DNA from: Mobula hypostoma
Lineage: Eukaryota
DNA: 64,000 nucleotides
Assembly (NCBI RefSeq): GCF_963921235.1
Contig: NC_086101.1
Coordinates: 2,108,001-2,172,000 of the forward strand
Reading direction: 5' to 3'
The translations under genes and the position numbers were made by a program. This document shows positions 1-53,504 of this stretch, piece after piece. The notes beneath the pieces were generated by a model. The model was given only the letters and a program-made list of their open reading frames with translations, made no database searches and was not told the DNA's origin. The number at the start of each line of letters is the position of its first letter. Position 1 is the first letter of the stretch.

Positions 1-282
1 TTTCTATGTTTCTAGAAACACTGACAATGTAAATGCATTGAAACTCTAAAATGCTTCAAAGTAAATGTTGTGGTACGTTTACTATTCAGAAAATGTATGA
101 ATTATATTCATTAACACAGGATATTTCACAATTATATTAACATAGATTTCAAAACTATATTATAATAATTATATTATACAAGGGAAAATGCAAGCTACAT
201 GACAACAAAGACTACGTATGCGGGAACATTTGTTACTGCACGGCCATACACCCGTGCAGCCTAGAGGGAAGAGTGGTCATAC

Positions 283-390
283 CTGTGTTCTGAAACAACG
301 TTGAAAGCATGAAGGCAGTAATTGATGTCAGCAAGCAGCCAAGACCAAAAATGGCCACTGTTATTATCTTGTATTCATGTGGGCGCATGC
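283..390 (-). CDS. Exon 3 (transmembrane) of unnamed Ig-superfamily membrane protein
   Basis: Minus-strand acceptor ttttcttgttcgtgtttcag| and donor |gtatga; 108 bp, phase 1-1; encodes GMRPHEYKIITVAIFGLGCLLTSITAFMLSTLFQNT (hydrophobic helix); splices in frame to the Ig exon. Confidence 0.8.
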
Positions 391-519
391 CTGAAACACG
401 AACAAGAAAACAATCAGCAACACTGCACTCGATTCAGCACTGCTGTCATATCAAATTGAAAACTAGTATGCGATTCTGACCGGTTTCAGGATCCACAGCT
501 TAAATATCTCTCAAGTAAG

Positions 520-820
520 CTGGAGTCTAGGAGCAGAGGTCACAGCCTCAGAACAGGGGAGGACTTTCTTTAGCCAGAGTGTAGTGATTCTTTGGAATTC
601 ATTGCCACAGATCGCAATGGAGGCCAAGCCACTGGGTATCGTTGAAGCAGAGCTCATAGGTTCTTGATTAGTCAGGGAATTAAAGGTTATGTGAACAAGG
701 CAAGAGAATGGGGTTAAGGGGAAAATTAAATCAGCCCCGGTGGAATAGCAGAGCAGACATGATGGGCAGAATGGCCTAATTCTGTTCCCATATCATATGA
801 ACATGTTAGAAGAATCCCAA
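520..820 (+). mobile_element. CR1 LINE 3' fragment
   Basis: Resembles the CR1 ORF2 end and 3' UTR (ttctttagccagagtgtagtg...tggcctaattctg) also seen at 44990-45235. Confidence 0.65.
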
Positions 821-1245
821 TAAATACCCATGCCGTCAGTTTGCAACACATTTCAAAGGTGGTCTGTTAAAGGAGCTCCCCACCCTGAAACATGACTGAA
901 TTTGGAGAGAACAATTCAGTTCCAGTTTTATGCCATTGTTTTGTTTTTAACTGACCTTTGACCAGTCATCAGAATCATAATCACTGGCACATGTTGTAAA
1001 ACTTGTTTTTGGTGGAAGGTGAAACTGCGTCCAGCAGAACTTTAACTCAAAAGGATTGATGTTTCAATTGATGCCAAGTCTCTGTGATAGGCAAGATCAG
1101 TCATCTCCCAGTAGTAACTCCTTCAGCATCACAGGATGAGCATCACCAAAACGCAGTTACAAAATGGTAATGAAGGTTTATCTTTGGATATTATCATGTC
1201 AGACTGAAGCATGAATGATCAGTATCTATCAGTCATATGAACAGA

Positions 1246-2074
1246 AACAGGCCAGGGCTGAGAAGTGGCAGATGCAGTTCAACCCAGATAAGTGTGAAGT
1301 GGTTCATTTTGGTAGCTCAAATATGATGGCAGAATATAGCATTAATGGTAAGACTCTTGGCAGTGTGGAGGATCAGAGGGATCTTGGGGTCCGAGTCCAT
1401 AGGACACTCAAAGCTGCTACGCAGGTTGACTCTGTGGTTAAGAAGGCGTATGGTCCATTGGCCTTCATCAATCGTGGGATTCAGTTTAAGAGCCGAGAGG
1501 TAATGTTGCAGCTATATAGGACCCTGGTCAGAGCCCAATTGGAGTACTGTGCTCAATTCTGGTCACCTCACTACAGAAAGGATGTGGAAACCATAGAAAG
1601 GGTGCAGAGGAGATTTACAAGGATGTTTCCTGGATTGGGGAGCATGCCTGATTAGAACAGATTGAGTGAACTCAGCCTTTTCTCCTTGGAGTGACAGAGG
1701 ATGAGAGGTGACCTGATAGAGGTGTATAAGAAGATGAGAGGCATTGATCGTGTGGATAGTCAGAGGCTTTTTCCCAGGGTTGAAATGGCTAGCACGAGAG
1801 GGCATAGTTTTAAGGTGCTTGGAAGTAGGTACAGAGGGGATATCAGTGGTAAGTTTTTTTACACAGAGAGTGGTGAGTGCGTGGAATGGGCTGCCAGCGG
1901 CGGTGGTGGAGGTGGAAATGATAGGGTCTTTTAAAAGACTCCTGGATGGATACATGGAGCTTAGAAAAATAGAGGGCTATGGGTAAGCCTAGGTAGTTCT
2001 AAGGTAAGGACATGTTTGGCACAGCTTTGTGGGCCGAAGGGCCTGTATTGTGCTGTAGATTTTCTGTGTTTCTA
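1246..2074 (+). mobile_element. CR1 LINE, 5'-truncated (RT C-terminus plus 3' UTR)
   Basis: WQMQFNPDKCEVVHFG, LEYCAQFWSP, RGDLIEVYK motifs; ends in a tttctgtgtttcta tail; in-frame stops. Confidence 0.9.
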
Positions 2075-3525
2075 CCAGAGGATTGGAGGATATCCAATGT
2101 TGTTCTGCTGTTTAAGAAAGGCTCTAAAAATAAACAGGGAAATTCTCAGCCAGTTACCCTGACATCAATACCGGGAAAATTACTGAAAGGGACTGGATAT
2201 AAGAGTATTTGGATTGCTTTGTGCATGCTAAGTCATGTCTAACCAATCTTATACAGTTTTTAGAAGAAGTTAAGAGGAAATTTGAGGAAGGGAAGGCGGT
2301 GGATGTTGTCTACGTGGACTTTAGGAGGGCATTTCATAAGGTCCGACGTGGGAGGCTGGTCTAGAAGGTTCAGTCGCTGGGCATTCAAGATGAGGTAGTA
2401 AATTCAATTAGCCAGTGGCTTTGTGGGAGAAGCCATTGAGTGGTAGTCGAGGTTGCCTCTCTGCCTGGAGGCCTGTGGCTAGTGGAGTCCTGCAGGGATT
2501 GGTGCTGGGTCCTGTTTGTTATCTCTATCAATGATCTGGATGATAATGTGTTTAATTGGATAATTTCACCTTTCGCCCTTAACCCATGACCTCTAGTTCT
2601 GGTTCCACCCTACCTCAGTCAAAAAAGCCTGCTTGCATTTACCCTGTCTATACCCCTCATAATTTTACATACCTTTATCAAATTTCACCTCAATCTTCGA
2701 CATTCCAAAGGATTTAATCCAAAACTATTCAATTTTTCCTTATAACTAAGTCCTCCAGACACAGCAACACCCTTGTAAATTTTCTCCACACACTTTCAAC
2801 CTTATTTACATTTTCCTGCAGGCAGGTGATCAAAACTGCACACAATACTCCAAGTTAGACCTCACCAATGTCTTATACAATTTCAACATAACATCCCATC
2901 TCCTGTACTCAATATTTAATTTATGAAGGTTAATGTGCCAAAAGCTTTCTTTATATTACCCTGTCAACCTATGACGCCACTTTCAACGTTTCAACGAGTT
3001 GCGGACCTATAATCCCAGATCCTTTTGTTCTACTGCAATCCTCAGTGCCCCAACATTCACTTATCTGGGTTGAACTCCATCTGCCACTTCTCAGACCAGT
3101 TTTGCATCCTATCAATGTCTCGCTGTAACCTCTGACAGCCCTCCATACTATCCACAACACCTCCAACCTTTGTATTATCAGCCAATTTACTAATCCATCC
3201 TTCCACTTCCTCATCCAGGTCACTTATAAAAAACACGAAGAGTAAGGGTCCCAGAACAGATCCCCGAGACACACCACTGCTCACCAGCCTCCATGCAGAA
3301 TATGACCCGTCTACAACCACTCCTTGCCTTCTGTGGGAGAGCCAGTTCTGGATCCACAAAGCAATGTCCCCTTGGATCCCATGCCCTCTCATGGCCCCTT
3401 CTGGTTCTCCTAATTTCATTCTTAAAATCCTTCCTGTTAGCCTTATAATTTTCTAGATCTCTATCATTACCTAGTTTTTTTGAACCTTTTGTAAGATCTT
3501 CTTTTCTTCTTGACTAGATTTACAA
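2075..3525. mobile_element. Mosaic of CR1 ORF2 fragments (+ 2075-2560, - 2561-3525)
   Basis: EDWRISNVVLLFKKG on +; GSVLGPLLF...ADNTKVGG...WQMEFNPDK on -. Confidence 0.8.
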
Positions 3526-5510
3526 AAGCCATCGGGCCAACCCAGAGCAAGTCAGCACCATTGAAAACCATAACAGGCGAGACCTTCAATGACAAAGGCA
3601 AACAGATGGAGAGATGGGTGGAGCATTACTCTGAACTCTTCTCCAGAGAAAACAGCATCTCGGACAGCGCGCTAGACGCCGTGGAATGCCTGCCTGTCAT
3701 GGAGGAACTTGATGCATTGCCGACTGCCGAAGAGCTGAGTAAAGCCATTGACAGCCTGCCCACTGGGAAGGCACCAGGATTGGATGGCATTCCACCAGAG
3801 GCCATCAAATGTGCAAAGGGCGTCCTGCTAAACCACCTGAACCAACTACTGTGCCAGTGCTGGACAGAGGGAGCAGTGCTGCAAGACATGAGAGACTGCA
3901 ACATTATCACCCTATATAAGAACAAAGAGGACAGAAGCGACTGTAACAACTACAGAGGAATCTCCTTGCTGAGCATCGTTGGGAAGGTCCTCACCTGCGT
4001 GGTCCAGAACAGACTGCAGAAAATAGCCGAAAGGGTATATCCTGAGTCTCAGTGCAGTTTTGGGTCAGAACGTTCCACAATCGATATGATCTTCTCCCTT
4101 CGACAGCTACAAGAGAAATGCAGAGAGCAAAGACAACCACTCTACATCGCTTTCATTGACCTCACGAAGGCCTTCGACCTTGTGAGCAGAGACAGTCTGT
4201 TCAAAATCCTCACCAGGATTGGTTGTCCCCCGAGGCTCCTCAGGATTGTTCAGTCATTCCACACAGACATGAAGGGTGTCGTTTAGTTCGACGGCTCTTC
4301 GGAGGCCTTCAGCATCCGCAGCGGTGTGAAGCAGGGCTGTGTGCTTGCCCCCACCCTGTTTGGCATCTTCTTCGCAGTCATGCTGAAGCACGCCTTTGGA
4401 ACATCAACTAATGGTGTCTAACTCCACACCAGATTGGACGGGAGGCTGTTTAGAATGTCCCGGCTGAGGGTGAAAACCAAGGTTCGTGAAGTACTCATCA
4501 GGGACATGTTGTTTACAGACGACACGGCACTGGCAACACACTCTGAAGAGCAACTGCAACACCTCATGGACAGCTTCTCAAGAGCCTCCCAGGACTTCAG
4601 CTTGACCATTGGCCTGAAGAAGACCAACGTGATGGTCCAAGGCACTGAGCACCCCCCCCCCGCCATTACCATCAACAACTACGAGCTGGAGGTAGTTCAC
4701 GAGTTTACATACCTTGGCTCCACCATCACGGACAGCCTCTCCCTAGACCCTGAGATCAACAGACGGATCGGACGAGCAGCCTCAACATTCGCCAGGTTGA
4801 CAAAGAGAGTCTGGGAGAACAGAAAGCTGACGATGCACACCAAGGTTGCAGTCTACTGGGCCTGTGTCCTCAGCACACTGCTTTACGGCAGCGAGACCTG
4901 GAGCCTCTACTCCAGACAACAGCAGCATCTCGACAACTTCCACCTTCGCAGCCTGAGACGCATCCTGGACATCACATGGACTGACCGAGTCACCAACAAT
5001 GAGGTCCTGGCCCGCGCCCAGATACCCAGCCTCTTCACCTTGCTCCAACAATGCTGACTCCGCTAGCTGGGCCACGTACACTGCATGTCAGATGGGAGGA
5101 TCCCGAAAGACCTGCTTTACGGGGAACTGGCCTCCGGCAAGAGGGCACAAGGGCGGCCCCATCTTCATTTCAAAGATGTCTGCAAGAGAGACATGAAGTC
5201 ATTGAAAATGACCGTCGAGAGGTGGGAGGACATCGCAAGCGATCGCTCTCACTGGAGGCTGGAACTACGCTGAGGTCTAAAAAGAGGAGAAGAGAAGCTG
5301 AGGCTTGCTGCTGAAGAAAAGCGCACTCGTCGGAAAAACAGCACCAAGACAACACTGGAGGATGGTGCCTTCAAGTGCAGTCGCTGCAGCCGAGACTGTC
5401 ACTCCCGTGTGGGACTCTACAGCCACAACAGACGCTGCTCTAACACAGACTGAAGCAAGACTTTCCAGGCACAGATCTATGGTCTCGTGAGACTAATGGA
5501 TACCACCACG
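3526..5510 (+). mobile_element. RTE-clade non-LTR retrotransposon, 5'-truncated, inserted into a CR1
   Basis: GKAPGLDGIPPE, NYRGISLLS, FIDLTKAFD, GVKQGCVLAPTLF, LFTDD, FTYLGS, LLYGSETW, GRIPKDLLYGEL; C-terminal CxxC...HxxxC; minus-strand CR1 resumes at 5511. Confidence 0.9.
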
Positions 5511-6070
5511 ACTGTACACCACGGTTCCTGTACCCTACCATCCTTTCCCTGTCTCATTGGAACGTATCTATGCAGAACCCCACACAAATATCCCCTGAAC
5601 ATTTGCCACATTTCTGCCATACGCTTCCCTGAGAACATCTGTTTCCAATTTATGCTTCCAAGTTCCTGCCTGATAGCTTCATATTTTCCCTTACTTCGGT
5701 TAAACATTTTCCTAACTTGTCTGTTCCTATCCTCCTCCAATGCTATGGTAAAGGAAATAGAATTGTGATCACTATCTCCAAAATGCTCTCCCACTGAGAG
5801 ACTGGGAGTCTCCAGGACCTCCCACATCTGACACCGAGCACAGAAAACTGGCCTCACACACGTTCTGTCTGTAATCTACACAAGTAACGTACCTCACGTT
5901 GACCCATTATTGCCTAAGCCCTGTTGAGCCAAAGCCTTCCTACTCTGTCTCCCTCTACTCTGTTGTCTGCCCCAACGGCCGCTTTGTGAAGCTGTCTTCT
6001 TTTTAAACTCTTCTCGCTGTTCGCTCTGGCCGACATCCACGCACTTGCGCAGTCATGCCCTGTTCAAACC
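5511..6070 (-). mobile_element. CR1 fragment (ORF2 GEHFGDSDHN region fused to ORF1/5' piece)
   Basis: ORF 5477-5857: FCARCQMWEV then SVGEHFGDSDHNSISF. Confidence 0.75.
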
Positions 6071-6149
6071 ACTTAAGAAATAACCTGGTACTTCACCTGT
6101 TGCTAGGGTGTCTCTGTGAGGGCCCTGGCAGTTTCTGCACTTGCCTTAA

Positions 6150-6640
6150 TTGAATTGACTTGACTTAATTTCTTACATGCTTCACATACATGAGGAGTAA
6201 AAATCTTTATGTTACATCTCCGTCTGAATGTGCAGTGTGCAAATTATAGCAACTTGTAACATATACAACAGAAATACACATGTGTCAGCATAAATTAATC
6301 AGTCTGATGGCCTGGTGGAAGAAGCTGTCCCGGAGCCTGTTGGTCCTGGCTTTTATGCTGTGGTACTGTTTCCTGGATGGTAGCAGCTGGAACAGTTTGT
6401 GGTTGGGGTGACTTGTGTCCCCAGTGATCCTTTGGGCCCTTTTTACACACCTGTCTTTGTAAACGTCCTGAATAGTGGGAAGTTCACAACTACAGATGGG
6501 CTGGGCTGTCTGCACCACTCTCTGCAGAGACCTGTGATTGAGGGAAGTACAGTTCCCGTACCACGCAGTGATGCAGCCAATCAGGATGCTCTCAGTTGTG
6601 CCCTGTAGAAAGTCCTTAGGAGTTAGGGACTCATGCCAAA
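6150..6640 (-). mobile_element. Rex1/Babar LINE 3' fragment
   Basis: HPNHKLFQLLPS...RTNRLRDSFFHQAIRLIN; nearly the same as 22400-22770. Confidence 0.8.
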
Positions 6641-6649
6641 CTTCACTTT

Positions 6650-9600
6650 CAGTAGCACAGAGGCTGGCACAGCACCCTACAGTGGCACGGAGGCCAGCGC
6701 GACACCCTACAGTGGCACAGAGGTCAGCACAACACCCTACAGTGGCACAGAGGCCAGCGCGACACCCTACAGTGGCACAGAGGCCAGCGCGACACCCTAC
6801 AGTGGCACGGAGGCCAGCGCGACACCCTACAGTGGCACGGAGGCCAGCGCGACACCCTACAGTGGCACAGAGGCCAGCGCGACACCCTACAGTGGCACGG
6901 AGGCCAGCGCGACACCCTACAGTGGCACGGAGGCCAGCGCGACACCCTACAGTGGCACGGAGACTGGCACAACACCCTACAGTGGCACGGAGGCTGGCAC
7001 AACACCCTACAGTGGCACAGAGGCCAGCACGACACGTTACAGTGGCACGGAGGCCAGCACGACACCCTACAGTGGCACGGAGGCCGGCACGACACCCTAC
7101 AGTGGCACGGAGGTCAGCACGACACCCTACAGTGGTACGGAGGCCAGCACGACACCCTACAGTGGCACAGAGGCTGGCACAACACCCTACAGTGGCACGG
7201 AGGTCAGCACGACACCCTACAGTGGCACGGAGGCCAGCGCGACGCCCTACAGTGGTACGGAGGTCAGCACGACACCCTACAGTGGCACGGAGGCCAGCGC
7301 GACACCCTACAGTGGCACGGAGGCCAGCGCGACACCCTACAGTGGCACGGAGGCCAGCGCGACACCCTACAGTGGCACGGAGGCCAGCACGACACCCTAC
7401 AGTAGCACGGAGGCCAGCACGACACCCTACAGTGGCACAGAGGTCAGCACGACACGTTACAGTGGCACAGAGGTCAGCACGACACCCTACAGTGGCACGG
7501 AGGCCAGCACGACACCCTACAGTGGCACGGAGGTCAGCACGACACCCTACAGTGGCACGGAGGCCAGCACGACACCCTACAGTGGCACAGAGGCCAGCAC
7601 GACACGTTACAGTGGCAGGGAGGCTGGCACAACACCCTACAGTGGCACAGAGGTCAGCACGACACGTTACAGTGGCACAGAGGTCAGCACGACACCCTAC
7701 AGTGGCACAGAGGCCAGCACGACACGTTACAGTGGCAGGGAGGCTGGCACAACACCCTACAGTGGCACAGAGGTCAGCACGACACGTTACAGTGGCACAG
7801 AGGTCAGCACGACACCCTACAGTGGCACAGAGGCTGGCACAACACCCTACAGTGGCACGGAGGCCAGCGCGACGCCCTACAGTGGCACAGAGGTCAGCAC
7901 GACACCCTACAGTGGCACGGAGGTCAGCACAACACCCTACAGTGGCACGGAGGCCAGCGCGACACCCTACAGTGGCACGGAGGCCAGCACGACACCCTAC
8001 AGTGGCACGGAGGTCAGCACGACACGTTACAGTGGCACAGAGGTCAGCACGACACGTTACAGTGGCACAGAGGTCAGCACGACACCCTACAGTGGCACAG
8101 AGGCCAGCACAACACCCTACAGTGGCACGGAGGCCAGCACAACACGTTACAGTGGCACAGAGGTCAGCACGACACGTTACAGTGGCACAGAGGTCAGCAC
8201 GACACCCTACAGTGGCACAGAGGCCAGCACAACACCCTACAGTGGCACGGAGGTCAGCACAACACCCTACAGTGGCACGGAGGCCAGCACAACACGTTAC
8301 AGTGGCACAGAGGCCAGCACGACACCCTACAGTGGCACAGAGGCCAGCACAACACCCTACAGTGGCACGGAGGTCAGCACGACACCCTACAGTGGCACGG
8401 AGGCCAGCACAACACGTTACAGTGGCACAGAGGCCAGCACGACACGTTACAGTGGCACGGAGGCCGGCACAACACCCTACAGTGGCACGGAGGTCAGCAC
8501 GACACGTTACAGTGGCACGGAGGTCAGCACGACACGTTACAGTGGCACGGAGGTCAGCACGACACCCTACAGTGGCACGGAGGTCAGCACGACACCCTAC
8601 AGTGGCACGGAGGCCAGCACGACACCCTACAGTGGCACGGAGGCCAGCACGACACCCTACAGTGGCACGGAGGCCAGCACGACACCCTACAGTGGCACGG
8701 AGGCCAGCACAGCACCCTACAGTGGCACGGAGGCCAGCACGACACCCTACAGTGGCACAGAGGCCGGCACGACACCCTACAGTGGCACGGAGGTCAGCAC
8801 GACACCCTACACTGGCACAGAGGCCAGCACGACACCCTACACTGGCACAGAGGCCAGCACGACACCCTACAGTGGCACGGAGGCCAGCACGACACCCTAC
8901 ACTGGCACGGAGGCCAGCACGACACGTTACAGTGGCACGGAGGTCAGCGCGACACCCTACAGTGGCACGGAGGCCGGCACGACACCCTACAGTGGCACGG
9001 AGGCCGGCACGACACCCTACAGTGGCACGGAGGCCAGCACGACACCCTACAGTGGCACGGAGGCCAGCACGACACCCTACACTGGCACGGAGGCCAGCAC
9101 GACACGTTACAGTGGCACGGAGGTCAGCACGACACGTTACAGTGGCACGGAGGTCAGCGCGACACGTTACAGTGGCACGGAGGCCGGCGCGACACCCTAC
9201 AGTGGCACGGAGGTCGGCGCGACACCCTACAGTGGCACGGAGGTCGGCGCGACACCCTACAGTGGCACGGAGGTCGGCACGACACCCTACAGTGGCACGG
9301 AGGTCGGCACGACACCCTACAGTGGCACGGAGGCCGGCACGACACCCTACAGTGGCACGGAGGCCGGCACGACACCCTACAGTGGCACGGAGGTCGGCAC
9401 GACACCCTACAGTGGCACGGAGGCCGGCACGGCACCCTACAGTGGCACGGAGGCCAGCACGACACCCTACACTGGCACGGAGGCCAGCACGTCACGTTAC
9501 AGTGGCACGGAGGTCAGCACGACACGTTACAGTGGCACGGAGGTCAGCGCGACACGTTACAGTGGCACAGAGGCCGGCACGACACCCTACAGTGGCACGG

Positions 9601-12600
9601 AGGCCGGCACGACACCCTACAGTGGCACGGAGGCCAGCACGACACCCTACAGTGGCACAGAGGCCGGCACGACACCCTACAGTGGCACGGAGGTCAGCAC
9701 GACACCCTACACTGGCACAGAGGCCAGCACGACACCCTACAGTGGCACAGAGGCCAGCACGACACCCTACAGTGGCACGGAGGCCAGCACAACACCCTAC
9801 ACTGGCACGGAGGCCAGCACGACACGTTACAGTGGCACGGAGGTCAGCGCGACACCCTACAGTGGCACGGAGGCCGGCACGACACCCTACAGTGGCACGG
9901 AGGCCGGCACGACACCCTACAGTGGCACGGAGGCCAGCACGACACCCTACAGTGGCACGGAGGCCAGCACGACACCCTACACTGGCACGGAGGCCAGCAC
10001 GACACGTTACAGTGGCACGGAGGTCAGCGCGACACGTTACAGTGGCACGGAGGTCAGCGCGACACGTTACAGTGGCACGGAGGCCGGCGCGACACCCTAC
10101 AGTGGCACGGAGGTCGGCGCGACACCCTACAGTGGCACGGAGGTCGGCACGACACCCTACAGTGGCACGGAGGCCGGCACGACACCCTACAGTGGCACGG
10201 AGGTCGGCACGACACCCTACAGTGGCACGGAGGCCGGCACGACACCCTACAGTGGCACGGAGGCCGGCACGACACCCTACAGTGGCACGGAGGCCGGCAC
10301 GACACCCTACAGTGGCACGGAGGCCAGCACGGCACCCTACAGTGGCACGGAGGCCAGCACGACACCCTACAGTGGCACGGAGGCCAGCACGACACCCTAC
10401 ACTGGCACGGAGGCCAGCACGTCACGTTACAGTGGCACGGAGGTCAGCACGACACGTTACAGTGGCACGGAGGTCAGCGCGACACGTTACAGTGGCACAG
10501 AGGCCGGCACGACACCCTACAGTGGCACGGAGGCCGGCACGACACCCTACAGTGGCACGGAGGTCAGCACAGCACCCTACAGTGGCACGGAGGCCAGCAC
10601 GACACCCTACAGTGGCACAGAGGCCGGCACGACACCCTACAGTGGCACGGAGGCCGGCACGACACCCTACAGTGGCACAGAGGCCAGCACGACACCCTAC
10701 AGTGGCACGGAGGCCAGCACGACACCCTACAGTGGCACGGAGGCCAGCACGACACCCTACACTGGCACGGAGGCCAGCACGACACGTTACAGTGGCACGG
10801 AGGTCAGCGCGACACCCTACAGTGGCACGGAGGCCGGCACGACACCCTACAGTGGCACGGAGGCCGGCACGACACCCTACAGTGGCACGGAGGCCAGCAC
10901 GACACCCTACAGTGGCACGGAGGCCAGCACGACACCCTACACTGGCACGGAGGCCAGCGCGACACGTTACAGTGGCACGGAGGTCAGCGCGACACGTTAC
11001 AGTGGCACGGAGGTCGGCGCGACACGTTACAGTGGCACGGAGGCCGGCGCGACACCCTACAGTGGCACGGAGGTCGGCGCGACACCCTACAGTGGCACGG
11101 AGGTCGGCACGACACCCTACAGTGGCACGGAGGCCGGCACGACACCCTACAGTGGCACGGAGGCCGGCACGACACCCTACAGTGGCACGGAGGCCGGCAC
11201 GACACCCTACAGTGGCACGGAGGTCAGCACGACACCCTACAGTGGCACGGAGGCCAGCACGGCACCCTACAGTGGCACGGAGGCCAGCACGACACCCTAC
11301 ACTGGCACGGAGGCCAGCGCGACACCCTACACTGGCACGGAGGCCAGCACGACACGTTACAGTGGCACGGAGGTCAGCACGACACGTTACAGTGGCACGG
11401 AGGTCAGCGCGACACGTTACAGTGGCACAGAGGCCAGCGCGACACGTTACAGTGGCACAGAGGCCGGCACGACACCCTACAGTGGCACGGAGGCCGGCAC
11501 GACACCCTACAGTGGCACGGAGGTCGGCGCGACACGTTACAGTGGCACAGAGGCCAGCGCGACACGTTACAGTGGCACAGAGGCCAGCACGACACCCTAC
11601 AGTGGCACGGAGGCCAGCACAACACCCTACAGTGGCACGGAGGCCAGCGCGACACGTTACAGTGGCACGGAGGCCAGCGCGACACGTTACAGTGGCACGG
11701 AGGCCAGCGCGACACCCTACAGTGGCACGGAGGCCAGCGCGACGCCCTACAGTGGCACAGAGGCCAGCGCGACACGTTACAGTGGCACAGAGGCCAGCGC
11801 GACGCCCTACAGTGGCACAGAGGCCAGCGCGACATGTTACAGTGGCACAGAGGCCAGCGCGACGCCCTACAGTGGCACAGAGGCCAGCGCGACGCCCTAC
11901 AGTGGCACAGAGGCCAGCGCGACACGTTACAGTGGCACGGAGGCCAGCGCGACACGTTACAGTGGCACGGAGGCCAGCGCGACACGTTACAGTGGCACGG
12001 AGGCCAGCGCGACACGTTACAGTGGCACGGAGGCCAGCGCGACGCCCTACAGTGGCACAGAGGCCAGCGCGACGCCCTACAGTGGCACAGAGGCCAGCGC
12101 GACGCCCTACAGTGGCACAGAGGCCAGCGCGACGCCCTACAGTGGCACAGAGGCCAGCGCGACGCCCTACAGTGGCACAGAGGCCAGCGCGACGCCCTAC
12201 AGTGGCACAGAGGCCAGCGCGACACCCTACAGTGGCACAGAGGCCAGCGCGACACCCTACAGTGGCACAGAGGCCAGCGCGACACCCTACAGTGGCACAG
12301 AGGCCAGCGCGACACGTTACAGTGGCACAGAGGCCAGCGCGACGCCAGCACGACGCCCTACAGTGGCACAGAGGCCAGCGCGACACCCTACAGTGGCACA
12401 GAGGCCAGCGCGACACCCTACAGTGGCACAGAGGCCAGCGCGACACCCTACAGTGGCACAGAGGCCAGCGCGACACGTTACAGTGGCACAGAGGCCAGCG
12501 CGACACGTTACAGTGGCACAGAGGCCAGCGCGACGCCAGCACGACGCCCTACAGTGGCACAGAGGCCAGCACGACGCCCTACAGTGGCACAGAGGCCAGC

Positions 12601-12895
12601 GCGACACCCTACAGTGGCACAGAGGCCAGCGCGACACCCTACAGTGGCACAGAGGCCAGCGCGACACCCTACAGTGGCACAGAGGCCAGCGCGACACGTT
12701 ACAGTGGCACAGAGGCCAGCACAGCACCCTACAGTGGCACAGAGGCCAGCGCGACACCCTACAGTGGCACAGAGGCCAGCGCGACACGTTACAGTGGCAC
12801 AGAGGCCAGCACAGCACCCTACAGTGGCACAGAGGCCAGCGCGACGCCAGCACGATGCCCTACAGTGGCACAGAGGCCAGCACAACACTCTACAG
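6650..12895 (+). repeat. 30-bp minisatellite, about 207 units (AGTGGCAC[A/G]GAGG[C/T]C[A/G]GC[A/G]CGACAC[CC/GT]TAC)
   Basis: Direct 30-bp periodicity; three 11-bp partial duplications near 12345, 12535 and 12845; lies in intron 2 of the Ig gene. Confidence 0.98.
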
Positions 12896-13130
12896 CAGAG
12901 CTGACCCAGGTTGAATTCCTGCTGCTGCCTCGAAGGAGTTTGTCCATTCTCCCTGTGACCGCGTGGATCTCCTTTGTGTGCTGGCATTTCCTCCCACAGT
13001 GCAATGGTGTACCGGTTGCTGGGTTAAATGGTTGCTCTAAGTTGTCCCATGATTAGGCTCTATCAGGGTTGCCGGGCGGTGCCTTTGGAAGGGCAGATTC
13101 CACCCTGCATCTCAATACTACAAATAATCT
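12863..13130 (+). mobile_element. tRNA-derived V-SINE (HE1-like)
   Basis: A-box-like TGGCACAGAGG, B-box-like GGTTGAATTCC (~12909), V-domain-like ttctccctgtgaccgcgtgg...tttcctcccacag, A-rich tail. Confidence 0.8.
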
Positions 13131-13359
13131 TAAAAAAAAGCTTGTAAAAAGTTGCAGGGAAGATGGGAGTGGGGAACGTCTGATGATCTTTAATGATTTT
13201 ATGAACTGGGCATGGACAATAAAAGCCAGAATTTGCAGAAACATTTATAAATAAAGATCCAGACCCCTTCCCTTTGCAAATAACATTTAAAATTGTTTAC
13301 TGTAGACACCTGACGTTGTGTCAGGTCACCCAGTGGTCTGAGGTGCTAATGAAACTCAC

Positions 13360-13620
13360 CGTCAACAACTAAATTGAATGTTTCTTTTTCAACGACACTA
13401 TTATTTCTTGCAATGCAGGTAAATAATCCGCAATCATCATAGTCAGCATCGGGAATATACAAGCTGGAATTGTCAGCAGACAGTTTATAAATAGTTGCTA
13501 TGTCGACATCTTCTTTCGTCCATTCAAATCTGCTACCATTCTCTGAAGAAATGCATTTCAGTTCGATCGTTTGGTGCGCTCTGCTGCTATTGTGTGTTAT
13601 TGTAAGTTCAGACCAAACAG
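13360..13620 (-). CDS. Exon 2: single C2/I-set-like Ig domain of unnamed membrane protein
   Basis: Acceptor tttttgctgttttag|, donor |gtgagt; 261 bp, phase 1-1, no stops: AVWSELTITHNSSRAHQTIELKCISSENGSRFEWTKEDVDIATIYKLSADNSSLYIPDADYDDCGLFTCIARNNSVVEKETFNLVVD; canonical C-x10-W...DxGxFxC. Confidence 0.9.
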
Positions 13621-14629
13621 CTAAAACAGCAAAAATCAGTGTTAATCCAACAATTTCACTTGTCTGCTAAAATCTATTGATTTACAACCTTTTTCTCTCA
13701 CTCTCGTGGGAGAATTACTTTTTAGGAAATTCATAACTTGGCTTCTCATTAATTTGCATATTCTAGTCGTCCCTGCCACTGAAAACTGCGTTCACATTTG
13801 GTTCATTTTCACACAGTAAACTTCAGTGGGAATCTCCCTTTACCGGCAGATTGCCTATCTGTAACTCCTGTAGTGGTCATCAATGCTGCCTCTCTCTCTC
13901 CACCAAGCTGCCACATCACACAGTGATGTGGGAGCGGGAAAATTCAAAAACCCGAGGCGCCGAGGGCCTTGTTCATTTGCAGGTTGAATTAGTGCTGGGG
14001 AAGGCAAATACACTGTCAGCACGCAATTCAAGAGGGGTTTGTATAATCTGGCATGCTGCAAGTCCGACTTGTTGATTTACTGACTGAGAGCTGGGGCGGA
14101 TCATGGTATTGAATTATCAGGCGGGAGGTACGGGAGCATTAGGACCCATTACTGGACGGGGCTGCCTGCTTGCAGCCGCCCGGAGCGAGGGGGAGGAAGC
14201 CGCGCCTTTCACTTGTGGCGGTGTGTTCACAACGGCGTTGAAGCTGCCCCTCGCAGGGGTTCGCTCTGGCAGAAGACAGGCTTGCACTCAGGCCTGAAGC
14301 CGCGGGGCCGCTTGCTTTTCAGCTGCCGGAGGAGAGCTGGCAGCTCTGCCGATTCCGCATGGGCTGCAGGGTCTGGACTACATGTTTGTCTGGCTGTGCC
14401 TTTGCACGTGTTTGTATATGTGAGGCCACAGACTTGAGTCGGGCGTTGGGCCGAGGCCTGGGCCTGGGCCTCCAAGCCGGGCGTCCTCACACACGGAACG
14501 GTCAGATGGTTATCAGTGGCCCCCACCCCGGATCGGGCAGGAGGTACGGGACAACACCTGTTCGGATGGGAAGCAGCCTCGCCCCCTCGGGCGCGGCGAG
14601 GGGAGGGCCGGGGGAGATGCCCGCCTCAC

Positions 14630-14693
14630 CTCGGACGACCACCGGGGCCAACAAGCCGAAGGCCCGGAGCCGGGAGGCGGCCAGCAGCGCCAT
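14630..14693 (-). CDS. Exon 1 (leader/signal peptide) of the Ig membrane gene
   Basis: Kozak gacgccATGg; MALLAASRLRAFGLLAPVVVR then phase-1 donor g|gtgagg, compatible with the Ig exon; lies in a CpG island. Confidence 0.75.
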
Positions 14694-14699
14694 GGCGTC

Positions 14700-14860
14700 C
14701 GTCGGCCAGCCGTCACCATGCCAACCGCTGTCGCGGGTCGCCCAATCGGAGCCGACCGCTGCCACGTGACCTCCAGCGCCACCGCCCATTGGAGTGTGGG
14801 CGGAGCTCTTGATTGACAGCTACTGTCCGGCCAATGGAGGGCGCGGGGGGGGCCTCGGCT
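14700..14860 (-). promoter_or_regulatory. CpG-island promoter of the Ig gene (island ~14140-15080)
   Basis: CCAAT 14742, ATTGG 14788, CCAAT 14831, E-box CACGTG 14763, dense CpG. Confidence 0.7.
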
Positions 14861-15374
14861 CTTGCCGGTTTGGGCTCCCGTTACCCGCCCGCTTGCAGGC
14901 GGCTGCTCCGTCCGGATTGAGTCCCGGCCGCCGACGGGTTTCGGCCCGAAGCAAGGCGCTGGGTTCTCACGCCCTTTCGGCGGGGTTGCTCGGTGGGCGA
15001 GCTCCAGCCCATCCAGGCAGGGAGATTGAGGTGTGCCCGAGCGGGGGCCTCTCACTGACGGTCAGCAAGGCCAGGCGGCTGCTTCTAGACTTCAGCAGAG
15101 GCCCATCTCAACAGGAGTAGGCCATTCAGCCCTTCGAGCCAGCACCACCATTCACTGTGATCATGGTTGATCATCCACAATCAGTATCCAGTTCCTGCCT
15201 TATCCCCATAACCTTTGATTCCGCTATCTTTAAGAGCTCTATCCATCTCTTTCTTGAAAGCATCCAGAGACTTGGCCTCCACAGCCTCCTGGGGCAGAGC
15301 ATTCCATATATCCATCACTCTCTGGGTGAAAAAGTTTTTCCTCAATGGCCTTAAACAGAAAATCCTGCAGAAAT

Positions 15375-23072: not shown

Positions 23073-25528
23073 CCGGATAAACGCCGACTTCACTCCGAGC
23101 GCCCGCCGCTCCGGATAAACGCCGACTTCACTCCGAGCGCCCGCCGCCCCGGATAAACGCCGACTTCACTCCGAGCGCCCGCCGCCCCGGATAAACGCCG
23201 ACTTCACTCCGAGCGCCCGCCGCTCCGGATAAACCCCGACTTCACTCCGAGCGCCCGCCGCTCCGGATAAACCCCGACTTCACTCCGAGCGCCCGCCGCC
23301 CCGGATAAACGCCGACTTCACTCCGAGCGCCCGCCGCTCCGGATAAACGCCGACTTCACTCCGAGCGCCCGCCGCTCCGGATAAACCCCGACTTCACTCC
23401 GAGCGCCCGCCGCCCCGGATAAACGCCGACTTCACTCCGAGCGCCCGCCGCCCCGGATAAACGCCGACTTCACTCCGAGCGCCCGCCGCCCCGGATAAAC
23501 GCCGACTTCACTCCGAGCGCCCGCCGCTCCGGATAAACGCCGACTTCACTCCGAGCGCCCGCCGCTCCGGATAAACCCCGACTTCACTCCGAGCGCCCGC
23601 CGCCCCGGATAAACGCCGACTTCACTCCGAGCGCCCGCCGCCCCGGATAAACGCCGACTTCACTCCGAGCGCCCGCCGCCCCGGATAAACGCCGACTTCA
23701 CTCCGAGCGCCCGCCGCTCCGGATAAACGCCGACTTCACTCCGAGCGCCCGCCGCTCCGGATAAACCCCGACTTCACTCCGAGCGCCCGCCGCCCCGGAT
23801 AAACGCCGACTTCACTCCGAGCGCCCGCCGCTCCGGATAAACCCCGACTTCACTCCGAGCGCCCGCCGCCCCGGATAAACGCCGACTTCACTCCGAGCGC
23901 CCGCCGCTCCGGATAAACGCCGACTTCACTCCGAGCGCCCGCCGCTCCGGATAAACGCCGACTTCACTCCGAGCGCCCGCCGCTCCGGATAAACGCCGAC
24001 TTCACTCCGAGCGCCCGCCGCTCCGGATAAACGCCGACTTCACTCCGAGCGCCCGCCGCCCCGGATAAACGCCGACTTCACTCCGAGCGCCCGCCGCCCC
24101 GGATAAACGCCGACTTCACTCCGAGCGCCCGCCGCTCCGGATAAACGCCGACTTCACTCCGAGCGCCCGCCGCTCCGGATAAACCCCGACTTCACTCCGA
24201 GCGCCCGCCGCCCCGGATAAACGCCGACTTCACTCCGAGCGCCCGCCGCTCCGGATAAACGCCGACTTCACTCCGAGCGCCCGCCGCCCCGGATAAACGC
24301 CGACTTCACTCCGAGCGCCCGCCGCTCCGGATAAACGCCGACTTCACTCCGAGCGCCCGCCGCTCCGGATAAACGCCGACTTCACTCCGAGCGCCCGCCG
24401 CTCCGGATAAACGCCGACTTCACTCCGAGCGCCCGCCGCTCCGGATAAACGCCGACTTCACTCCGAGCGCCCGCCGCCCCGGATAAACGCCGACTTCACT
24501 CCGAGCGCCCGCCGCCCCGGATAAACGCCGACTTCACTCCGAGCGCCCGCCGCTCCGGATAAACGCCGACTTCACTCCGAGCGCCCGCCGCTCCGGATAA
24601 ACGCCGACTTCACTCCGAGCGCCCGCCGCTCCGGATAAACGCCGACTTCACTCCGAGCGCCCGCCGCCCCGGATAAACGCCGACTTCACTCCGAGCGCCC
24701 GCCGCTCCGGATAAACGCCGACTTCACTCCGAGCGCCCGCCGCTCCGGATAAACGCCGACTTCACTCCGAGCGCCCGCCGCCCCGGATAAACGCCGACTT
24801 CACTCCGAGCGCCCGCCGCCCCGGATAAACGCCGACTTCACTCCGAGCGCCCGCCGCTCCGGATAAACCCCGACTTCACTCCGAGCGCCCGCCGCTCCGG
24901 ATAAACGCCGACTTCACTCCGAGCGCCCGCCGCTCCGGATAAACCCCGACTTCACTCCGAGCGCCCGCCGCTCCGGATAAACGCCGACTTCACTCCGAGC
25001 GCCCGCCGCCCCGGATAAACGCCGACTTCACTCCGAGCGCCCGCCGCCCCGGATAAACGCCGACTTCACTCCGAGCGCCCGCCGCCCCGGATAAACGCCG
25101 ACTTCACTCCGAGCGCCCGCCGCTCCGGATAAACCCCGACTTCACTCCGAGCGCCCGCCGCCCCGGATAAACGCCGACTTCACTCCGAGCGCCCGCCGCT
25201 CCGGATAAACGCCGACTTCACTCCGAGCGCCCGCCGCTCCGGATAAACGCCGACTTCACTCCGAGCGCCCGCCGCTCCGGATAAACGCCGACTTCACTCC
25301 GAGCGCCCGCCGCTCCGGATAAACGCCGACTTCACTCCGAGCGCCCGCCGCTCCGGATAAACCCCGACTTCACTCCGAGCGCCCGCCGCCCCGGATAAAC
25401 GCCGACTTCACTCCGAGCGCCCGCCGCCCCGGATAAACGCCGACTTCACTCCGAGCGCCCGCCGCCCCGGATAAACGCCGACTTCACTCCGAGCGCCCGC
25501 CGCCCCGGATAAACGCCGACTTCACTCC
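23073..25528. repeat. 38-bp CpG-rich minisatellite, about 64 units (CCGGATAAAC[G/C]CCGACTTCACTCCGAGCGCCCGCCGC[T/C])
   Basis: Direct periodicity (23073, 23111, ...); only two variable positions seen. Confidence 0.98.
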
Positions 25529-25539
25529 GGAGCGGCAGC

Positions 25540-25657
25540 CTCGGCGGATCGCCCCCGCTTTCCCATTGCACCCGCCCCCGGATCGCCATTGGCTGCTTGC
25601 CGATAATTGACAGCGTGAACTGCAACGACATATCCGGTGGGAGAGCGTGCAGCAAAC
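25540..25657. promoter_or_regulatory. C11orf98 core promoter / 5' UTR
   Basis: GC box CCCGCCCC 25571, ATTGG 25588, CpG-rich, immediately upstream of the ATG. Confidence 0.65.
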
Positions 25658-25693
25658 ATGGCCCCGGGAGGCAAAATTAATCGTCCGCGCACG
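25658..25693 (+). CDS. C11orf98: C11orf98 exon 1 (MAPGGKINRPRT)
   Basis: Kozak aacATGg; matches the recalled human N-terminus MGAPGGKINRPRT; donor |gtaact, phase 0. Confidence 0.93.
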
Positions 25694-25704
25694 GTAACTG
25701 GTGG

Positions 25705-26540
25705 TGGGGATGAGGATGGAGGCAAGCGAGGGAGGGAGGGAGGCGAGTAGGTGAGGGTGGAGGGAGGAGCGGAGGGGCTGAGGGTGGGTGGAGGGGAGAC
25801 GAAGGTTGGGGGAGGGGAGGGGTAAAGTTGGGGGGAGGAGGGAAGGGGTGAGGTAGGGGGGAGTGGAGGGGGTGAGGGTGGCTGGAGGGGAAGGGTGGCT
25901 GGAGGGGAGGGGTGAGGGTGGAGGAGGGGAGGGGTGAGGGTGGGTGGAGGGGAGACGAAGGATAGGAGGGAGGAGAGGGGTGAGGGTGGGGGAGTGGAGG
26001 GGTGAGGGTGGGGTGGGGGTGGGGTGGGGTGGGGAGGGGTAAGGTTGGGGGAGGAAGGAAGGGGTGAGGGGGAGTGGAGGGGTGGGGGAGGGGAGTGGGT
26101 GAGGGTGGCTGGAGTGGAGGTGTGAGGTTGGAGGGAGGAGCGGAGGAGCTGAGGGTGGGTGGAGGGGAGACGAAGGTTGGGGGGAGGGGAGGGGTAAAGT
26201 TGGGGGGAGGAGGGAAGGGGTGAGGTAGGGGGGAGTGGAGGGGGTGAGGGTGGCTGGAGGGGAGGGGTGAGGGTGGAGGAGGGGAGGGGTGAGGGTGGGT
26301 GGAGGGGAGACGAAGGATAGGAGGGAGGAGAGGGGTGAGGGTGGGGGAGTGGAGGGGTGAGGGTGGGGTGGGGAGGGGTAATGTTGGGGGGAGGAAGGAA
26401 GGGGTGAGGGGGAGTGGAGGGGTGGGGGAGGGGAGTGGGTGAGGGTGGCTGGAGTGGAGGTGTGAGGTTGGAGGGAGGAGCGGAGGGGCTGAGGGTGGGG
26501 GGAGGGGAGGGGTGAGGGTGAGTTTTGGGGGAGGGGTGGC
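25705..26540 (+). repeat. G/A-rich low-complexity tract with an internal ~360-370 bp duplication (C11orf98 intron 1)
   Basis: ggagacgaaggttggggg at ~25795 and ~26167; ggagacgaaggatagg at ~25951 and ~26306. Confidence 0.85.
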
Positions 26541-26994
26541 CCTGATGATGGATTCTACTTTCCTGCACTGCATCCCGTGTAGATGCGCTCAATGATCTGA
26601 ACAGCTTTACCCGTGATGGACTGTGCCAAATCCTTTTGGAGGATTTTCCGTTCAAGGGCATTGGTGTTTCTATACAGGCCGCGATGCAGCCAGTCAGTGT
26701 ACTCTCCACCACACCTATCGAAGTTCGTCAGAGTTTTTACTATATCAAATCTTGGCAAACTCCTAAGGAAGTAGAGGTGTTATATTCCCACTTCACTTTG
26801 GCAGATTTTGAAAGTGCCAGAGGTGGTGCTGAGATATTGTGGAATAATTCCTGCAAGGGGCGTTAGGCTAGAGAAGCTGGGGGTATTCCAATGCAGCTCA
26901 GAAATGGACTGGTGAGAATTTTCTGCTGGGATCTGGAATAGACTTGATGGCCTGAATGGCCTCTTTTTATTGCAGTAAATCATTTTGAGGGTTT

Positions 26995-53139: not shown

Positions 53140-53310
53140 GCGCCGCCGCCGCCGAGCGCTTGCCCGAGGACGCGCGCTCCCGCCGCCGAGCGCTTGCCCG
53201 AGGACGCGCGCTCCCGCCGCCGTGCGCTTGCCCGAGGACGCGCGCTCCCGCCGCCGTGCGCTTACCCGAGGACGCGCGCTCCCGCGCCGCCGCCGCCGCC
53301 GCCGCCGCTG
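53140..53310. repeat. 34-bp CpG-rich repeat x4 plus (GCC)n
   Basis: gccg[a/t]gcgctt[g/a]cccgaggacgcgcgctcccgcc. Confidence 0.9.
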
Positions 53311-53481: not shown

Positions 53482-53504
53482 GTGAGGCGCCAATTTAAAC
53501 CGGG

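What the first reader, a model, noticed from the sequence alone, without database searches (positions are those of the whole stretch)
283..14693. Ig-domain membrane gene missed by the ORF track
Seen: three phase-1-compatible minus-strand exons with canonical splice sites give a leader (MALLAASRLRAFGLLAPVVVRAVWS), one short Ig domain (45 aa between cysteines, an extra Cys in DCGLFTC, four N-glycan sequons) and a TM helix, continuing off-window. Known: phase 1-1 Ig exons are typical of the IgSF, and LSADNSSLYI resembles CEACAM/HEPACAM C2-type domains. Inference: those families normally start with an IgV domain, so a leader joined directly to a lone C2/I domain under a housekeeping-type CpG/CCAAT promoter is unusual. 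The TM is not followed by a basic stop-transfer cluster, so further TM exons (a CD47-like topology) are possible. It may be a lineage-specific receptor family.
Basis: partly seen in the sequence, partly recalled or inferred. Interest (0 to 1): 0.75.

Follow-up and report, generated by a model that had tools for sequence, protein, structure and literature searches.

The report
Ray gene: one Ig domain, five-pass anchor
The three exons are the real, expressed start of a devil-ray gene, listed but unnamed in public annotation, for a surface protein that carries one antibody-like domain on a five-pass membrane anchor, a build known in mammals only from the "don't-eat-me" protein CD47.

Summary
Minus-strand exons 14693-14630, 13620-13360 and 390-283 have GT/AG sites and are all phase 1. 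Their 144 aa equal the N-terminus of RefSeq LOC134346412 of Mobula hypostoma ("uncharacterized protein", 311 aa). Spliced contigs from three runs join exon 1 to exon 2.

The full protein is a signal peptide, one I-set/C2 Ig domain, five TM helices and an acidic tail.

I found orthologues only in rays, skates and sharks. In little skate the gene has nine coding exons: leader, Ig, one phase 1-1 exon per TM helix, two tail exons. A full-length transcript confirms them. Published CD47 descriptions fit this layout.

An extra Ig cysteine (C85) and a cysteine in the TM4-TM5 loop (C249) are invariant. They could form a bond like CD47's C15-C245.

Homology to CD47 is unproven. Pfam and profile searches find no CD47 match. 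Foldseek and language-model features rank CD47 first or near it, but TM-scores are low. Closer structural neighbours are unnamed "HEPACAM-like" Ig + multi-TM proteins of reptiles, frogs and sharks.

The scan earlier noted other Ig + 5-TM genes 20-29 Mb away in this genome. I did not test kinship with them.

The function is unknown.

The parts
14000..15250 (.). CpG-island promoter with CCAAT/ATTGG boxes and a CACGTG E-box upstream of the start codon
   Evidence: GC 0.60-0.71 and CpG observed/expected 0.69-0.90. The motifs were read. An RNA contig reaches 14707.
14630..14707 (-). Exon 1: at least 14 nt of 5' UTR plus CDS 14693-14630. It encodes the signal peptide MALLAASRLRAFGLLAPVVVR and the first base of the next codon. 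Phase 1 donor.
   Evidence: (X2 record 9 covers 14630-14707).
13621..14629 (-). Intron 1 (1009 nt, GT..AG)
   Evidence: The joint 13620^14630 is seen in contigs of three runs.
13360..13620 (-). Exon 2 (261 nt, phase 1-1): one I-set/C2 Ig domain. It holds the canonical pair C44-C90, the extra C85 and four N-glycan sequons.
   Evidence: Pfam Ig_3 and I-set above cut-off. Z 11.2 at 1.9 A rmsd to FGFR2 Ig-C2. RNA contigs cover it. The skate orthologue's exon has the same length.
391..13359 (-). Intron 2 (about 13 kb). It holds a 30-bp minisatellite at 6650-12845 and LINE/RT fragments at about 1200-5900.
   Evidence: One contig (X1 record 1) reads from exon 2 into this intron as far as 13206.
283..390 (-). 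Exon 3 (108 nt, phase 1-1): linker GMRPHEYK plus TM helix 1
   Evidence: Run X2 holds all its sampled words. The skate exon has the same length.
1..282 (-). Start of intron 3. The gene runs on beyond the left end of the window: four more TM exons and the tail exons.
   Evidence: GTATGA donor at 282-277. The gene spans 51,143 bp in the Mobula hypostoma assembly. The rest of the protein is in P0156.

Best explanation
This is the 5' third of a real, expressed and conserved chondrichthyan gene, RefSeq LOC134346412 of Mobula hypostoma.

Shown:
- The protein is a 311-aa multi-pass membrane glycoprotein: cleavable signal peptide, one N-glycosylated I-set/C2 Ig domain, an 8-residue linker, five TM helices and an acidic cytoplasmic tail (EDEESEEEHDKKEDE).
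- The gene is modular. In the skate orthologue there is a leader exon, an Ig exon, one symmetric phase-1 exon per TM helix, and two short tail exons.

Inferred:
- The signal peptide and the glycan sequons place the Ig domain outside the cell and the tail inside. The TM4-TM5 loop (ECL2) then lies outside.
- The invariant spare cysteines C85 and C249 probably form an inter-domain disulfide. C85 sits in the membrane-facing E-F turn of the Ig domain. C249 sits in ECL2, which is the best conserved segment of the protein. The bond would hold the Ig domain down on the helix bundle, as C15-C245 does in CD47.
- The CpG-island promoter suggests broad expression.
- The most likely role is a cell-surface recognition molecule: a ligand or co-receptor for an unknown partner, built like CD47. 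The acidic tail, with casein-kinase-type SEEE sites, may steer trafficking.
- By evolution it is a single-Ig member of an undescribed group of Ig + pentaspan proteins. Common descent with CD47 is plausible but unproven.
For: - The exons, splice sites and frame were read directly.
- The exon 1-exon 2 junction is present in spliced contigs of three runs.
- Exon 3 words are present in the same run whose contig extends 135 nt past exon 2.
- The 144 aa are identical to the N-terminus of P0156.
- Five hydrophobic helices appear in all full-length orthologues and in the AlphaFold model: H111-139, 145-177, 181-205, 217-242, 253-292.
- Orthologues exist in Hemitrygon, Hypanus, Amblyraja, Leucoraja and Mustelus.
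- The skate gene has a unique nine-exon solution in which exons 2-7 are all phase 1-1. A full-length transcript contig matches all nine blocks at 98-100%.
- C44, C85, C90, C210 and C249 are invariant in seven sequences. ECL2 is 13/17 identical between ray and shark, against 42/83 for the Ig domain.
- CD47 is the top whole-length Foldseek hit in PDB and in AFDB Swiss-Prot.
- CD47 clusters are the top three by language-model features once generic Ig families are skipped: score 0.87-0.88, 182-190 of 256 features.
- CD47's ECD-ECL2 disulfide and its exon plan are described in PMC8410850 and PMC10902115.
Against: - Nothing here shows surface location, glycosylation, the disulfide or any ligand.
- There is no sequence similarity to CD47. 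Pfam PF04549 and PF08204 give no hit at E<=10. A profile of the TM region finds no CD47 chain in the PDB.
- Foldseek TM-scores to CD47 are only 0.21-0.26 with rmsd about 20 A. CD47 is not among the top 50 by VIA-align Z.
- The model is of middling confidence: pLDDT 65.8, pTM 0.50.
- The Ig domain is I-set/C2, not V-set. Its spare cysteine sits at a different place in the fold than CD47's C15.
- The acidic tail could instead point to an intracellular (TGN/endosome) residence.
- The exon 2-exon 3 junction in this species is inferred, not seen directly.
Confidence: 0.8

Rival explanations
1. It is the cartilaginous-fish orthologue of CD47 itself, diverged beyond sequence recognition and with its V domain remodelled into a short I/C2-like domain.
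For: - Same architecture and the same exon plan: leader, Ig, five TM exons, short tail exons.
- A spare cysteine pair linking the Ig domain to ECL2.
- CD47 ranks first by Foldseek and by language-model features.
- A CpG-island promoter, which fits a broadly expressed gene.
Against: - No Pfam CD47 or V-set_CD47 hit and no profile hit to CD47 in the PDB.
- The Ig type differs.
- CD47's conserved SWF linker motif is absent from the linker DGMRPHEY.
- AFDB clusters annotated HEPACAM-like match much better than CD47: E 2e-10 and TM 0.48, against 6.5e-6 and 0.23.
- This genome has several Ig + 5-TM genes, and an earlier unchecked note places another candidate next to BBX, the neighbour of human CD47.
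Confidence: 0.1
2. It is a single-Ig offshoot of a wider, unnamed vertebrate family of CEACAM/HEPACAM-like V-C2 ectodomains on a multi-pass anchor. That family arose independently of CD47, so the likeness to CD47 is convergence.
For: - AFDB cluster hits: A0A3Q0GE46 'HEPACAM-like' (E 2.3e-10, TM 0.48, 272 columns), A0A4D9ECI9 'HEPACAM family member 2', and the unnamed 'Ig-like domain-containing protein' A0A401PWX1 (TM 0.50).
- The ESM Atlas's own model of P0156 aligns 254 residues (24-284) at TM 0.66 to a 427-aa cluster of 110 chordate members carrying V-set and I-set domains.
- The horn-shark 'CEACAM1-like' protein P0102/P0159 has the same DCGxYTC motif. BLAST aligns 163 aa through the Ig domain, TM1 and TM2 at 28% identity (E 6e-13), and it has a GC(E/A)P loop before its last helix.
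Against: - TM-only similarity to the horn-shark protein is marginal: hhalign E 0.034 with probability 1.5%, and shuffle p about 0.05.
- I could not fetch the AFDB or Atlas sequences, so I could not test them by sequence.
- Convergence and deep common origin with CD47 cannot be told apart with the data in hand.
Confidence: 0.35
3. It is a single-pass Ig receptor, as the three window exons alone suggest, or a secreted single-Ig protein. On this view the five-TM form is an annotation artefact.
For: - One contig reads from exon 2 into intron 2 and would end ...VVDGEFH*.
- Short read-through fragments exist in other species: P0062 and P0095.
- RefSeq lists isoforms that skip single TM exons.
Against: - A full-length spliced skate transcript carries all five TM exons.
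- The TM helices and ECL2 are better conserved than the Ig domain.
- Contig X2 continues 135 nt past exon 2, and that run holds exon 3.
- The read-through contigs can be unspliced pre-mRNA from a 13-kb intron.
Confidence: 0.04

Closest known systems
CD47 (integrin-associated protein), vertebrates; full-length structure PDB 7MYZ
   Same: - One extracellular Ig domain followed by five TM helices and a short cytoplasmic tail.
- A leader exon, one Ig exon, separate exons for the membrane domain and small tail exons.
- A spare cysteine in the Ig domain and one in the TM4-TM5 loop.
- Top whole-length Foldseek hit and top named language-model neighbour.
   Different: - The Ig domain is I-set/C2 (45 residues between the cysteines), not V-set.
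- The spare Ig cysteine is in the E-F turn, not near the N-terminus.
- There is no SWF linker.
- There is no Pfam PF04549/PF08204 match and no profile match.
- TM-scores are only 0.21-0.26.
- The tail is strongly acidic.
Predicted 'HEPACAM-like' / 'CEACAM1-like' Ig + multi-TM proteins: AFDB A0A3Q0GE46, A0A4D9ECI9, A0A401PWX1; horn shark XP_067865339 (P0159)
   Same: - A membrane-proximal C2 domain with the D-C-G-x-[YF]-x-C motif, followed by several TM helices.
- These are the best structural matches: E 2e-10 and TM 0.48-0.50, and TM 0.66 for the Atlas model.
- BLAST alignment runs through the Ig domain, TM1 and TM2 at 28% identity.
- A G-C-x-P loop precedes the last helix.
   Different: - Those proteins carry a V domain and one or two C2 domains. 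This one carries a single Ig domain directly after the leader.
- TM-only sequence similarity is not significant.
- None of them has been characterised, and their names come from automatic annotation.
Poxviral CD47-like proteins (e.g. myxoma M128L)
   Same: An Ig domain plus five TM helices with the conserved inter-domain cysteine pair, per PMC8410850.
   Different: Those proteins retain recognisable sequence identity with CD47. This family does not. It is cellular and restricted to cartilaginous fishes.
Other Ig + five-TM genes of this same genome (scan notes s1-141772, s1-141813)
   Same: Same chromosome, 20-29 Mb away. They are described as Ig ectodomains on a five-pass anchor, found only in sharks and rays, and unnamed in the annotation.
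   Different: They are described as having two Ig domains, or CD2/SLAM-like V domains.

Membership tests
Immunoglobulin superfamily, I-set/C2-type domain | Pfam Ig models matched above their curated cut-offs | tested here: met
   Ig_3 35.0 bits (cut-off 30) and I-set 31.8 (cut-off 23.7) on exon 2.
Immunoglobulin superfamily, I-set/C2-type domain | Canonical B-F cysteine pair, the strand-C tryptophan and the D-x-G-x-Y-x-C turn | tested here: met
   C44 ... W54 ... D83-D-C-G-L-F-T-C90. C44 and C90 are invariant in seven sequences.
Immunoglobulin superfamily, I-set/C2-type domain | Ig beta-sandwich fold closest to C2/I-set domains | tested here: met
   Z 11.2, rmsd 1.9 A over 79 residues to the FGFR2 Ig-C2 domain 4hwu_A. 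NCAM and contactin Ig domains score Z 10.8-11.0. The Ig part of the model has pLDDT of about 72-82 over most of its length.
CD47 family | V-set Ig domain of the CD47 type (Pfam PF08204) | tested here: not met
   No PF08204 hit. Generic V-set scores 16-20 bits, below its cut-off of 26. The domain is I-set/C2.
CD47 family | CD47 five-TM region recognisable by sequence (Pfam PF04549) | tested here: not met
   No hit at E<=10 in four family members. A TM-region profile finds no CD47 chain in the PDB.
CD47 family | Architecture: one Ig domain, five TM helices, short cytoplasmic tail | tested here: met
   Five helices by hydropathy and in the model. CD47 is the top whole-length Foldseek hit.
CD47 family | Inter-domain disulfide between the ectodomain and ECL2 (C15-C245) | tested here: inconclusive
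   C85 (Ig) and C249 (TM4-TM5 loop) are invariant in all seven sequences. The Ig cysteine sits at a different position than in CD47, and no bond was demonstrated.
CD47 family | SWF loop in the linker between the ectodomain and helix I | tested here: not met
   The linker is V-D-G-M-R-P-H-E-Y-K, with D, G, P, E and Y invariant. The motif described in PMC8410850 is absent.
CD47 family | Gene plan: leader exon, Ig exon, separate exons for the membrane domain, small tail exons | tested here: met
   The skate orthologue has 9 exons, with exons 3-7 carrying one TM helix each, all phase 1-1. The first three exons in the window agree. The CD47 plan is taken from PMC10902115. That CD47 exons 3-7 carry one helix each is my recollection, not something I tested.
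CD47 family | Binding of SIRP-alpha or thrombospondin | not testable with these tools
   This needs binding assays.
HEPACAM / CEACAM families | N-terminal V-set domain followed by C2 domain(s) and a single TM helix or GPI anchor | tested here: not met
   RNA joins the leader directly to the only Ig exon. The protein has five TM helices. Only the C2-type domain resembles these families: CEACAM1 hits in the PDB at E about 1e-3.
Chondrichthyan LOC134346412 orthologue group (unnamed) | Collinear similarity over the Ig domain, five TM helices and acidic tail, with the invariant motifs DCG, DGW, WLP and EEGC | tested here: met
   The window protein is identical to P0156 over its 144 aa. It is 83-85% identical to stingray proteins and 51-52% to skate and shark proteins. 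Alignments are, and profile hits at E 1e-106 to 1e-170.

The most novel reading that the evidence does not exclude
CD47 is not a one-off. It is the only mammalian survivor of an ancient jawed-vertebrate superfamily of Ig-on-pentaspan surface proteins. Cartilaginous fishes keep several lineages of that superfamily. This single-I-set member, broadly expressed from a CpG-island promoter, would serve as a second 'marker of self' type ligand for an as yet unknown inhibitory receptor.
Probability: 0.25. Interest if true: 0.75.

Novelty: new variant of a known kind. Interest (0 to 1): 0.55.

Why it matters
[quoted passage not shown] Here is a second, clearly distinct Ig + five-TM family. It has the same exon plan and a matching spare cysteine pair, and it is conserved across rays, skates and sharks.

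It gives a natural comparison for asking what the pentaspan anchor and the tethering of the Ig domain to ECL2 are for. It also allows a test of whether CD47 had relatives that mammals lost.

The immediate practical value is modest. It gives an unnamed RefSeq locus a described architecture and a gene model confirmed by RNA.

Tried and rejected
- Word-index search with the Ig exon found nothing. The candidate length window excluded the 311-aa protein.
- A single-sequence AlphaFold model of exon 2 was too poor to use, pLDDT 45.
- TM-region searches were uninformative. phmmer and a profile against the PDB gave only chance hits: KdpA at E 6.2 and K2P at E 0.07. Atlas features on the TM part alone gave no usable hit. 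A word-index search of the TM region returned only close orthologues.
- VIA-align second look and wide search were filled by Ig domains. The helix bundle matched only generic four-helix bundles (p130Cas, Z 9.9), and CD47 was not in the top 50. The TM fold comparison is therefore inconclusive.
- Horn-shark TM domain against this family: hhalign E 0.034 and shuffle p about 0.05. This is not significant.
- A 'DUF5564' gene lies upstream in skate and shark. The skate locus there is P/S-rich low-complexity sequence and repeats, so I rejected it as a synteny marker. No paper mentions DUF5564 or PF17719.
- The downstream convergent skate gene (878 aa, no Pfam hit) could not be named.
P0122 is not on record, so its organism stays unknown.
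- I did not obtain CD47 sequences from any tool, so I ran no direct profile-profile test against CD47.
- Mitochondrial presequence reading of the arginine-rich leader: rejected. Orthologues have ordinary signal peptides, the next exon is a glycan-sequon-bearing Ig domain, and the N72 sequon is kept in all aligned sequences that include the Ig exon.
- Literature searches for a described Ig-pentaspan family other than CD47 and its poxviral copies found none.

Full report
**What is in the window.**
- Read on the minus strand, the sequence shows an ATG at 14693, with exon 1 ending at 14630 before GTGAGG.
- Exon 2 runs 13620-13360 (261 nt), behind TTTTAG and before GTGAGT.
- Exon 3 runs 390-283 (108 nt), behind TTTCAG and before GTATGA.
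- Every junction is phase 1.
- The spliced reading frame gives 144 residues with no stop: a leader, an Ig domain and a hydrophobic helix.
- Cysteines lie at 44, 85, 90 and 127. N-x-S/T sequons lie at 32, 49, 72 and 94.
- Exon 2 passes Pfam's curated cut-offs for Ig_3 (35.0 against 30) and I-set (31.8 against 23.7).
- The start lies in a true CpG island, with GC 0.71 and CpG observed/expected 0.90 at 14501-15000. CCAAT/ATTGG boxes and a CACGTG are present.

**Is it expressed and spliced as proposed?**
- Three runs of the same species hold exon 2 completely.
- Their contigs skip exactly 13621-14629, which is GT..AG on the minus strand. Exon 1 is therefore joined directly to the Ig exon.
- One of these contigs reaches 14707, so the 5' UTR is at least 14 nt.
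- That same contig carries 135 further bases beyond the 3' end of exon 2. The same run holds every sampled word of exon 3. This fits exon 3 (108 nt) plus 27 nt of exon 4, but I did not see the second junction directly.
- A related species also holds exon 2, with six substitutions.
- One contig runs on from exon 2 into intron 2. It would end the protein as ...VVDGEFH*. I take this as pre-mRNA, or possibly a minor soluble form.

**Identity.**
- An exhaustive HMMER search with the Ig exon returned the expected flood of multi-Ig giants.
- It also returned a few single-stretch, high-identity hits of 265-310 aa, and one model of 688 aa.
- These are "uncharacterized protein" models from Hemitrygon akajei, Hypanus sabinus, Amblyraja radiata and Mustelus asterias.
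- A profile search added Mobula hypostoma LOC134346412 (P0156, 311 aa) and a skate transcript-derived protein. Cluster listing added Leucoraja erinacea.
- The window's 144 residues are identical to the first 144 of P0156. The leftover base G fits its next residue, D.
- The window is therefore Mobula hypostoma or a near twin. The gene is already predicted there and spans 51 kb. It was "missed" only by the scan's ORF track.

**The whole protein.**
- All full-length orthologues have five strongly hydrophobic helices after the Ig domain.
- An AlphaFold model built on five sequences (pLDDT 65.8, pTM 0.50) shows a beta-sandwich followed by five long helices.
- The tail is acidic: EDEESEEEHDKKEDE.
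- With a signal peptide and a glycosylated Ig domain outside, the TM4-TM5 loop is extracellular.
- This loop, KKYEHSEEGCAPEWPLLHR, is the best conserved part of the protein. It is 13/17 identical between ray and shark, against 42/83 for the Ig domain.
- Five cysteines are invariant in all seven sequences, including the most divergent one (about 33% identical overall): the canonical Ig pair C44/C90, the extra C85, C249 in that loop, and a cytosolic C210.
- C85 lies in the E-F turn, which in an Ig domain faces the same end as the C-terminus of strand G. That end faces the membrane.
- A C85-C249 disulfide is therefore the natural inference. It has not been shown.

**Gene plan.**
- The little-skate locus could be fetched.
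- Fitting the RefSeq protein to it gives one unique solution of nine coding exons: 85 nt leader, 261 nt Ig, then 108, 102, 117, 84 and 93 nt with one TM helix each, then 38 and 75 nt for the tail. Exons 2-7 are all phase 1-1.
- The Ig and TM1 exons have exactly the lengths seen in the window.
- A 1425-nt transcript contig from a public run matches all nine blocks at 98-100%. The five-TM mRNA is therefore real.
- The symmetric phases explain why RefSeq lists in-frame isoforms lacking single exons.

**Comparison with CD47.**
[quoted passage not shown] It describes the C15-C245 bond between the ectodomain and ECL2 as a conserved anchor, kept even in poxviral copies.
- PMC10902115 states that the constant exons encode the ectodomain and the membrane domain, and that the later small exons encode alternative tails.
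- The ray family matches in architecture, in gene plan and in having a spare Ig/ECL2 cysteine pair.
- CD47 is the top whole-length Foldseek hit in the PDB (7myz_C, E 1.8e-5) and in AFDB Swiss-Prot (E 1.4e-6).
- CD47 clusters are the three nearest named clusters by language-model features once generic Ig families are excluded: 0.87-0.88, with 182-190 of 256 features.
- Membership fails on every sequence test, however. There is no PF04549 or PF08204 hit and no profile hit to CD47 in the PDB. The Ig domain is I-set/C2 rather than V-set. There is no SWF linker.
- Foldseek TM-scores are only 0.21-0.26, and the VIA-align lists do not contain CD47.
- So it works like, or at least is built like, CD47. 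It cannot be filed as a CD47 family member.

**Closer neighbours.**
- AFDB fold clusters give better matches than CD47: an automatically named "HEPACAM-like" protein (E 2.3e-10, TM 0.48 over 272 columns), a "HEPACAM family member 2" and unnamed "Ig-like domain-containing" proteins.
- The ESM Atlas's own model of P0156 aligns 254 residues at TM 0.66 to a 427-aa cluster of 110 chordate proteins with V-set and I-set domains.
- Among the sequence hits, a horn-shark "CEACAM1-like" protein (V-C2-C2 plus several TM helices) shares the DCGxYTC motif. It aligns through the Ig domain, TM1 and TM2 at 28% identity (E 6e-13).
- Its membrane part alone is only marginally similar: hhalign E 0.034 and shuffle p about 0.05.
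- The gene is most economically read as a single-Ig member of a wider, undescribed set of Ig-on-multi-pass proteins.
- Earlier notes of this scan report two other Ig + five-TM genes 20-29 Mb away on the same chromosome. I could not compare sequences, so kinship is open.

**Function.**
- Nothing here measures function.
- The most likely reading is a glycosylated cell-surface recognition molecule. Its Ig domain would be held on the helix bundle by the linker and a disulfide, and the gene would be broadly expressed from a CpG-island promoter.
- The strong conservation of TM1, TM4 and ECL2 suggests that the bundle does more than anchor. It may make lateral contacts, as CD47 does with integrins.
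- The acidic tail, with casein-kinase-type sites, may direct sorting.
- All of these points are inferences.

**Verdict.**
- The gene is already in RefSeq, but it is unnamed, and my literature searches found no description of it.
- I rate it a new variant of a known kind, the CD47-type Ig-pentaspan build, and of moderate interest.

Noticed in passing
window 6650-12845: A large minisatellite sits inside intron 2: about 190 copies of a 30-bp unit (CAGTGGCACGGAGGCCAGCACGACACCCTA) at 92% match, plus about 16 more degenerate copies. GC is 0.62-0.68 with a strong positive AT skew. It is already listed by the scan as s1-142594.
   Followed up: partly
window 15112-15300: A short interspersed repeat just upstream of the CpG island attracts hundreds of RNA contigs with summed depths of 10^3-10^4 in all four runs. 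It is an abundant transcribed SINE-like element, not part of the gene.
   Followed up: no
window 14747-15006: One run has a 260-nt contig over the upstream half of the CpG island, beyond the gene's 5' end. On the plus strand it holds only a 27-codon ORF. It could be a divergent promoter transcript or an alternative first exon; a stingray isoform (P0151) has a different first exon.
   Followed up: partly
window 13206-13359: One RNA contig continues from exon 2 into intron 2. Read through, the protein would end ...VVDGEFH*, a secreted single Ig domain. Fragments P0062 and P0095 from other species show the same read-through. This may be only pre-mRNA.
   Followed up: partly
window 1215-5900 and many places between 16 and 64 kb: There are reverse-transcriptase/LINE fragments, with the recurring 'RRLRGDLIEVYK..MRGIDRV' tails. 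No other convincing cellular gene appears in the remaining 49 kb of the window.
   Followed up: no
window 25487-26727 and 52600-55160; L002 2600-7100: These are long P/S-rich low-complexity ORFs. In skate and shark assemblies similar sequence upstream of the orthologue is called as a gene hitting Pfam DUF5564. It looks like a spurious prediction on simple repeats.
   Followed up: partly
P0040 (Mustelus asterias LOC144487916), residues about 290-688: The shark model carries a 400-residue serine/threonine-rich and coiled C-terminal extension that is absent from all ray and skate orthologues. It may be a fused gene model or a lineage-specific tail.
   Followed up: no
P0038, P0153, P0155, P0122 (RefSeq/UniParc isoforms of orthologues): These isoforms lack exactly one exon each: TM3, TM5, the Ig exon or TM1. 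That is possible in frame because exons 2-7 are all phase 1-1. Skipping one TM helix would invert the topology of everything downstream, so they are either artefacts or a notable regulatory device.
   Followed up: partly
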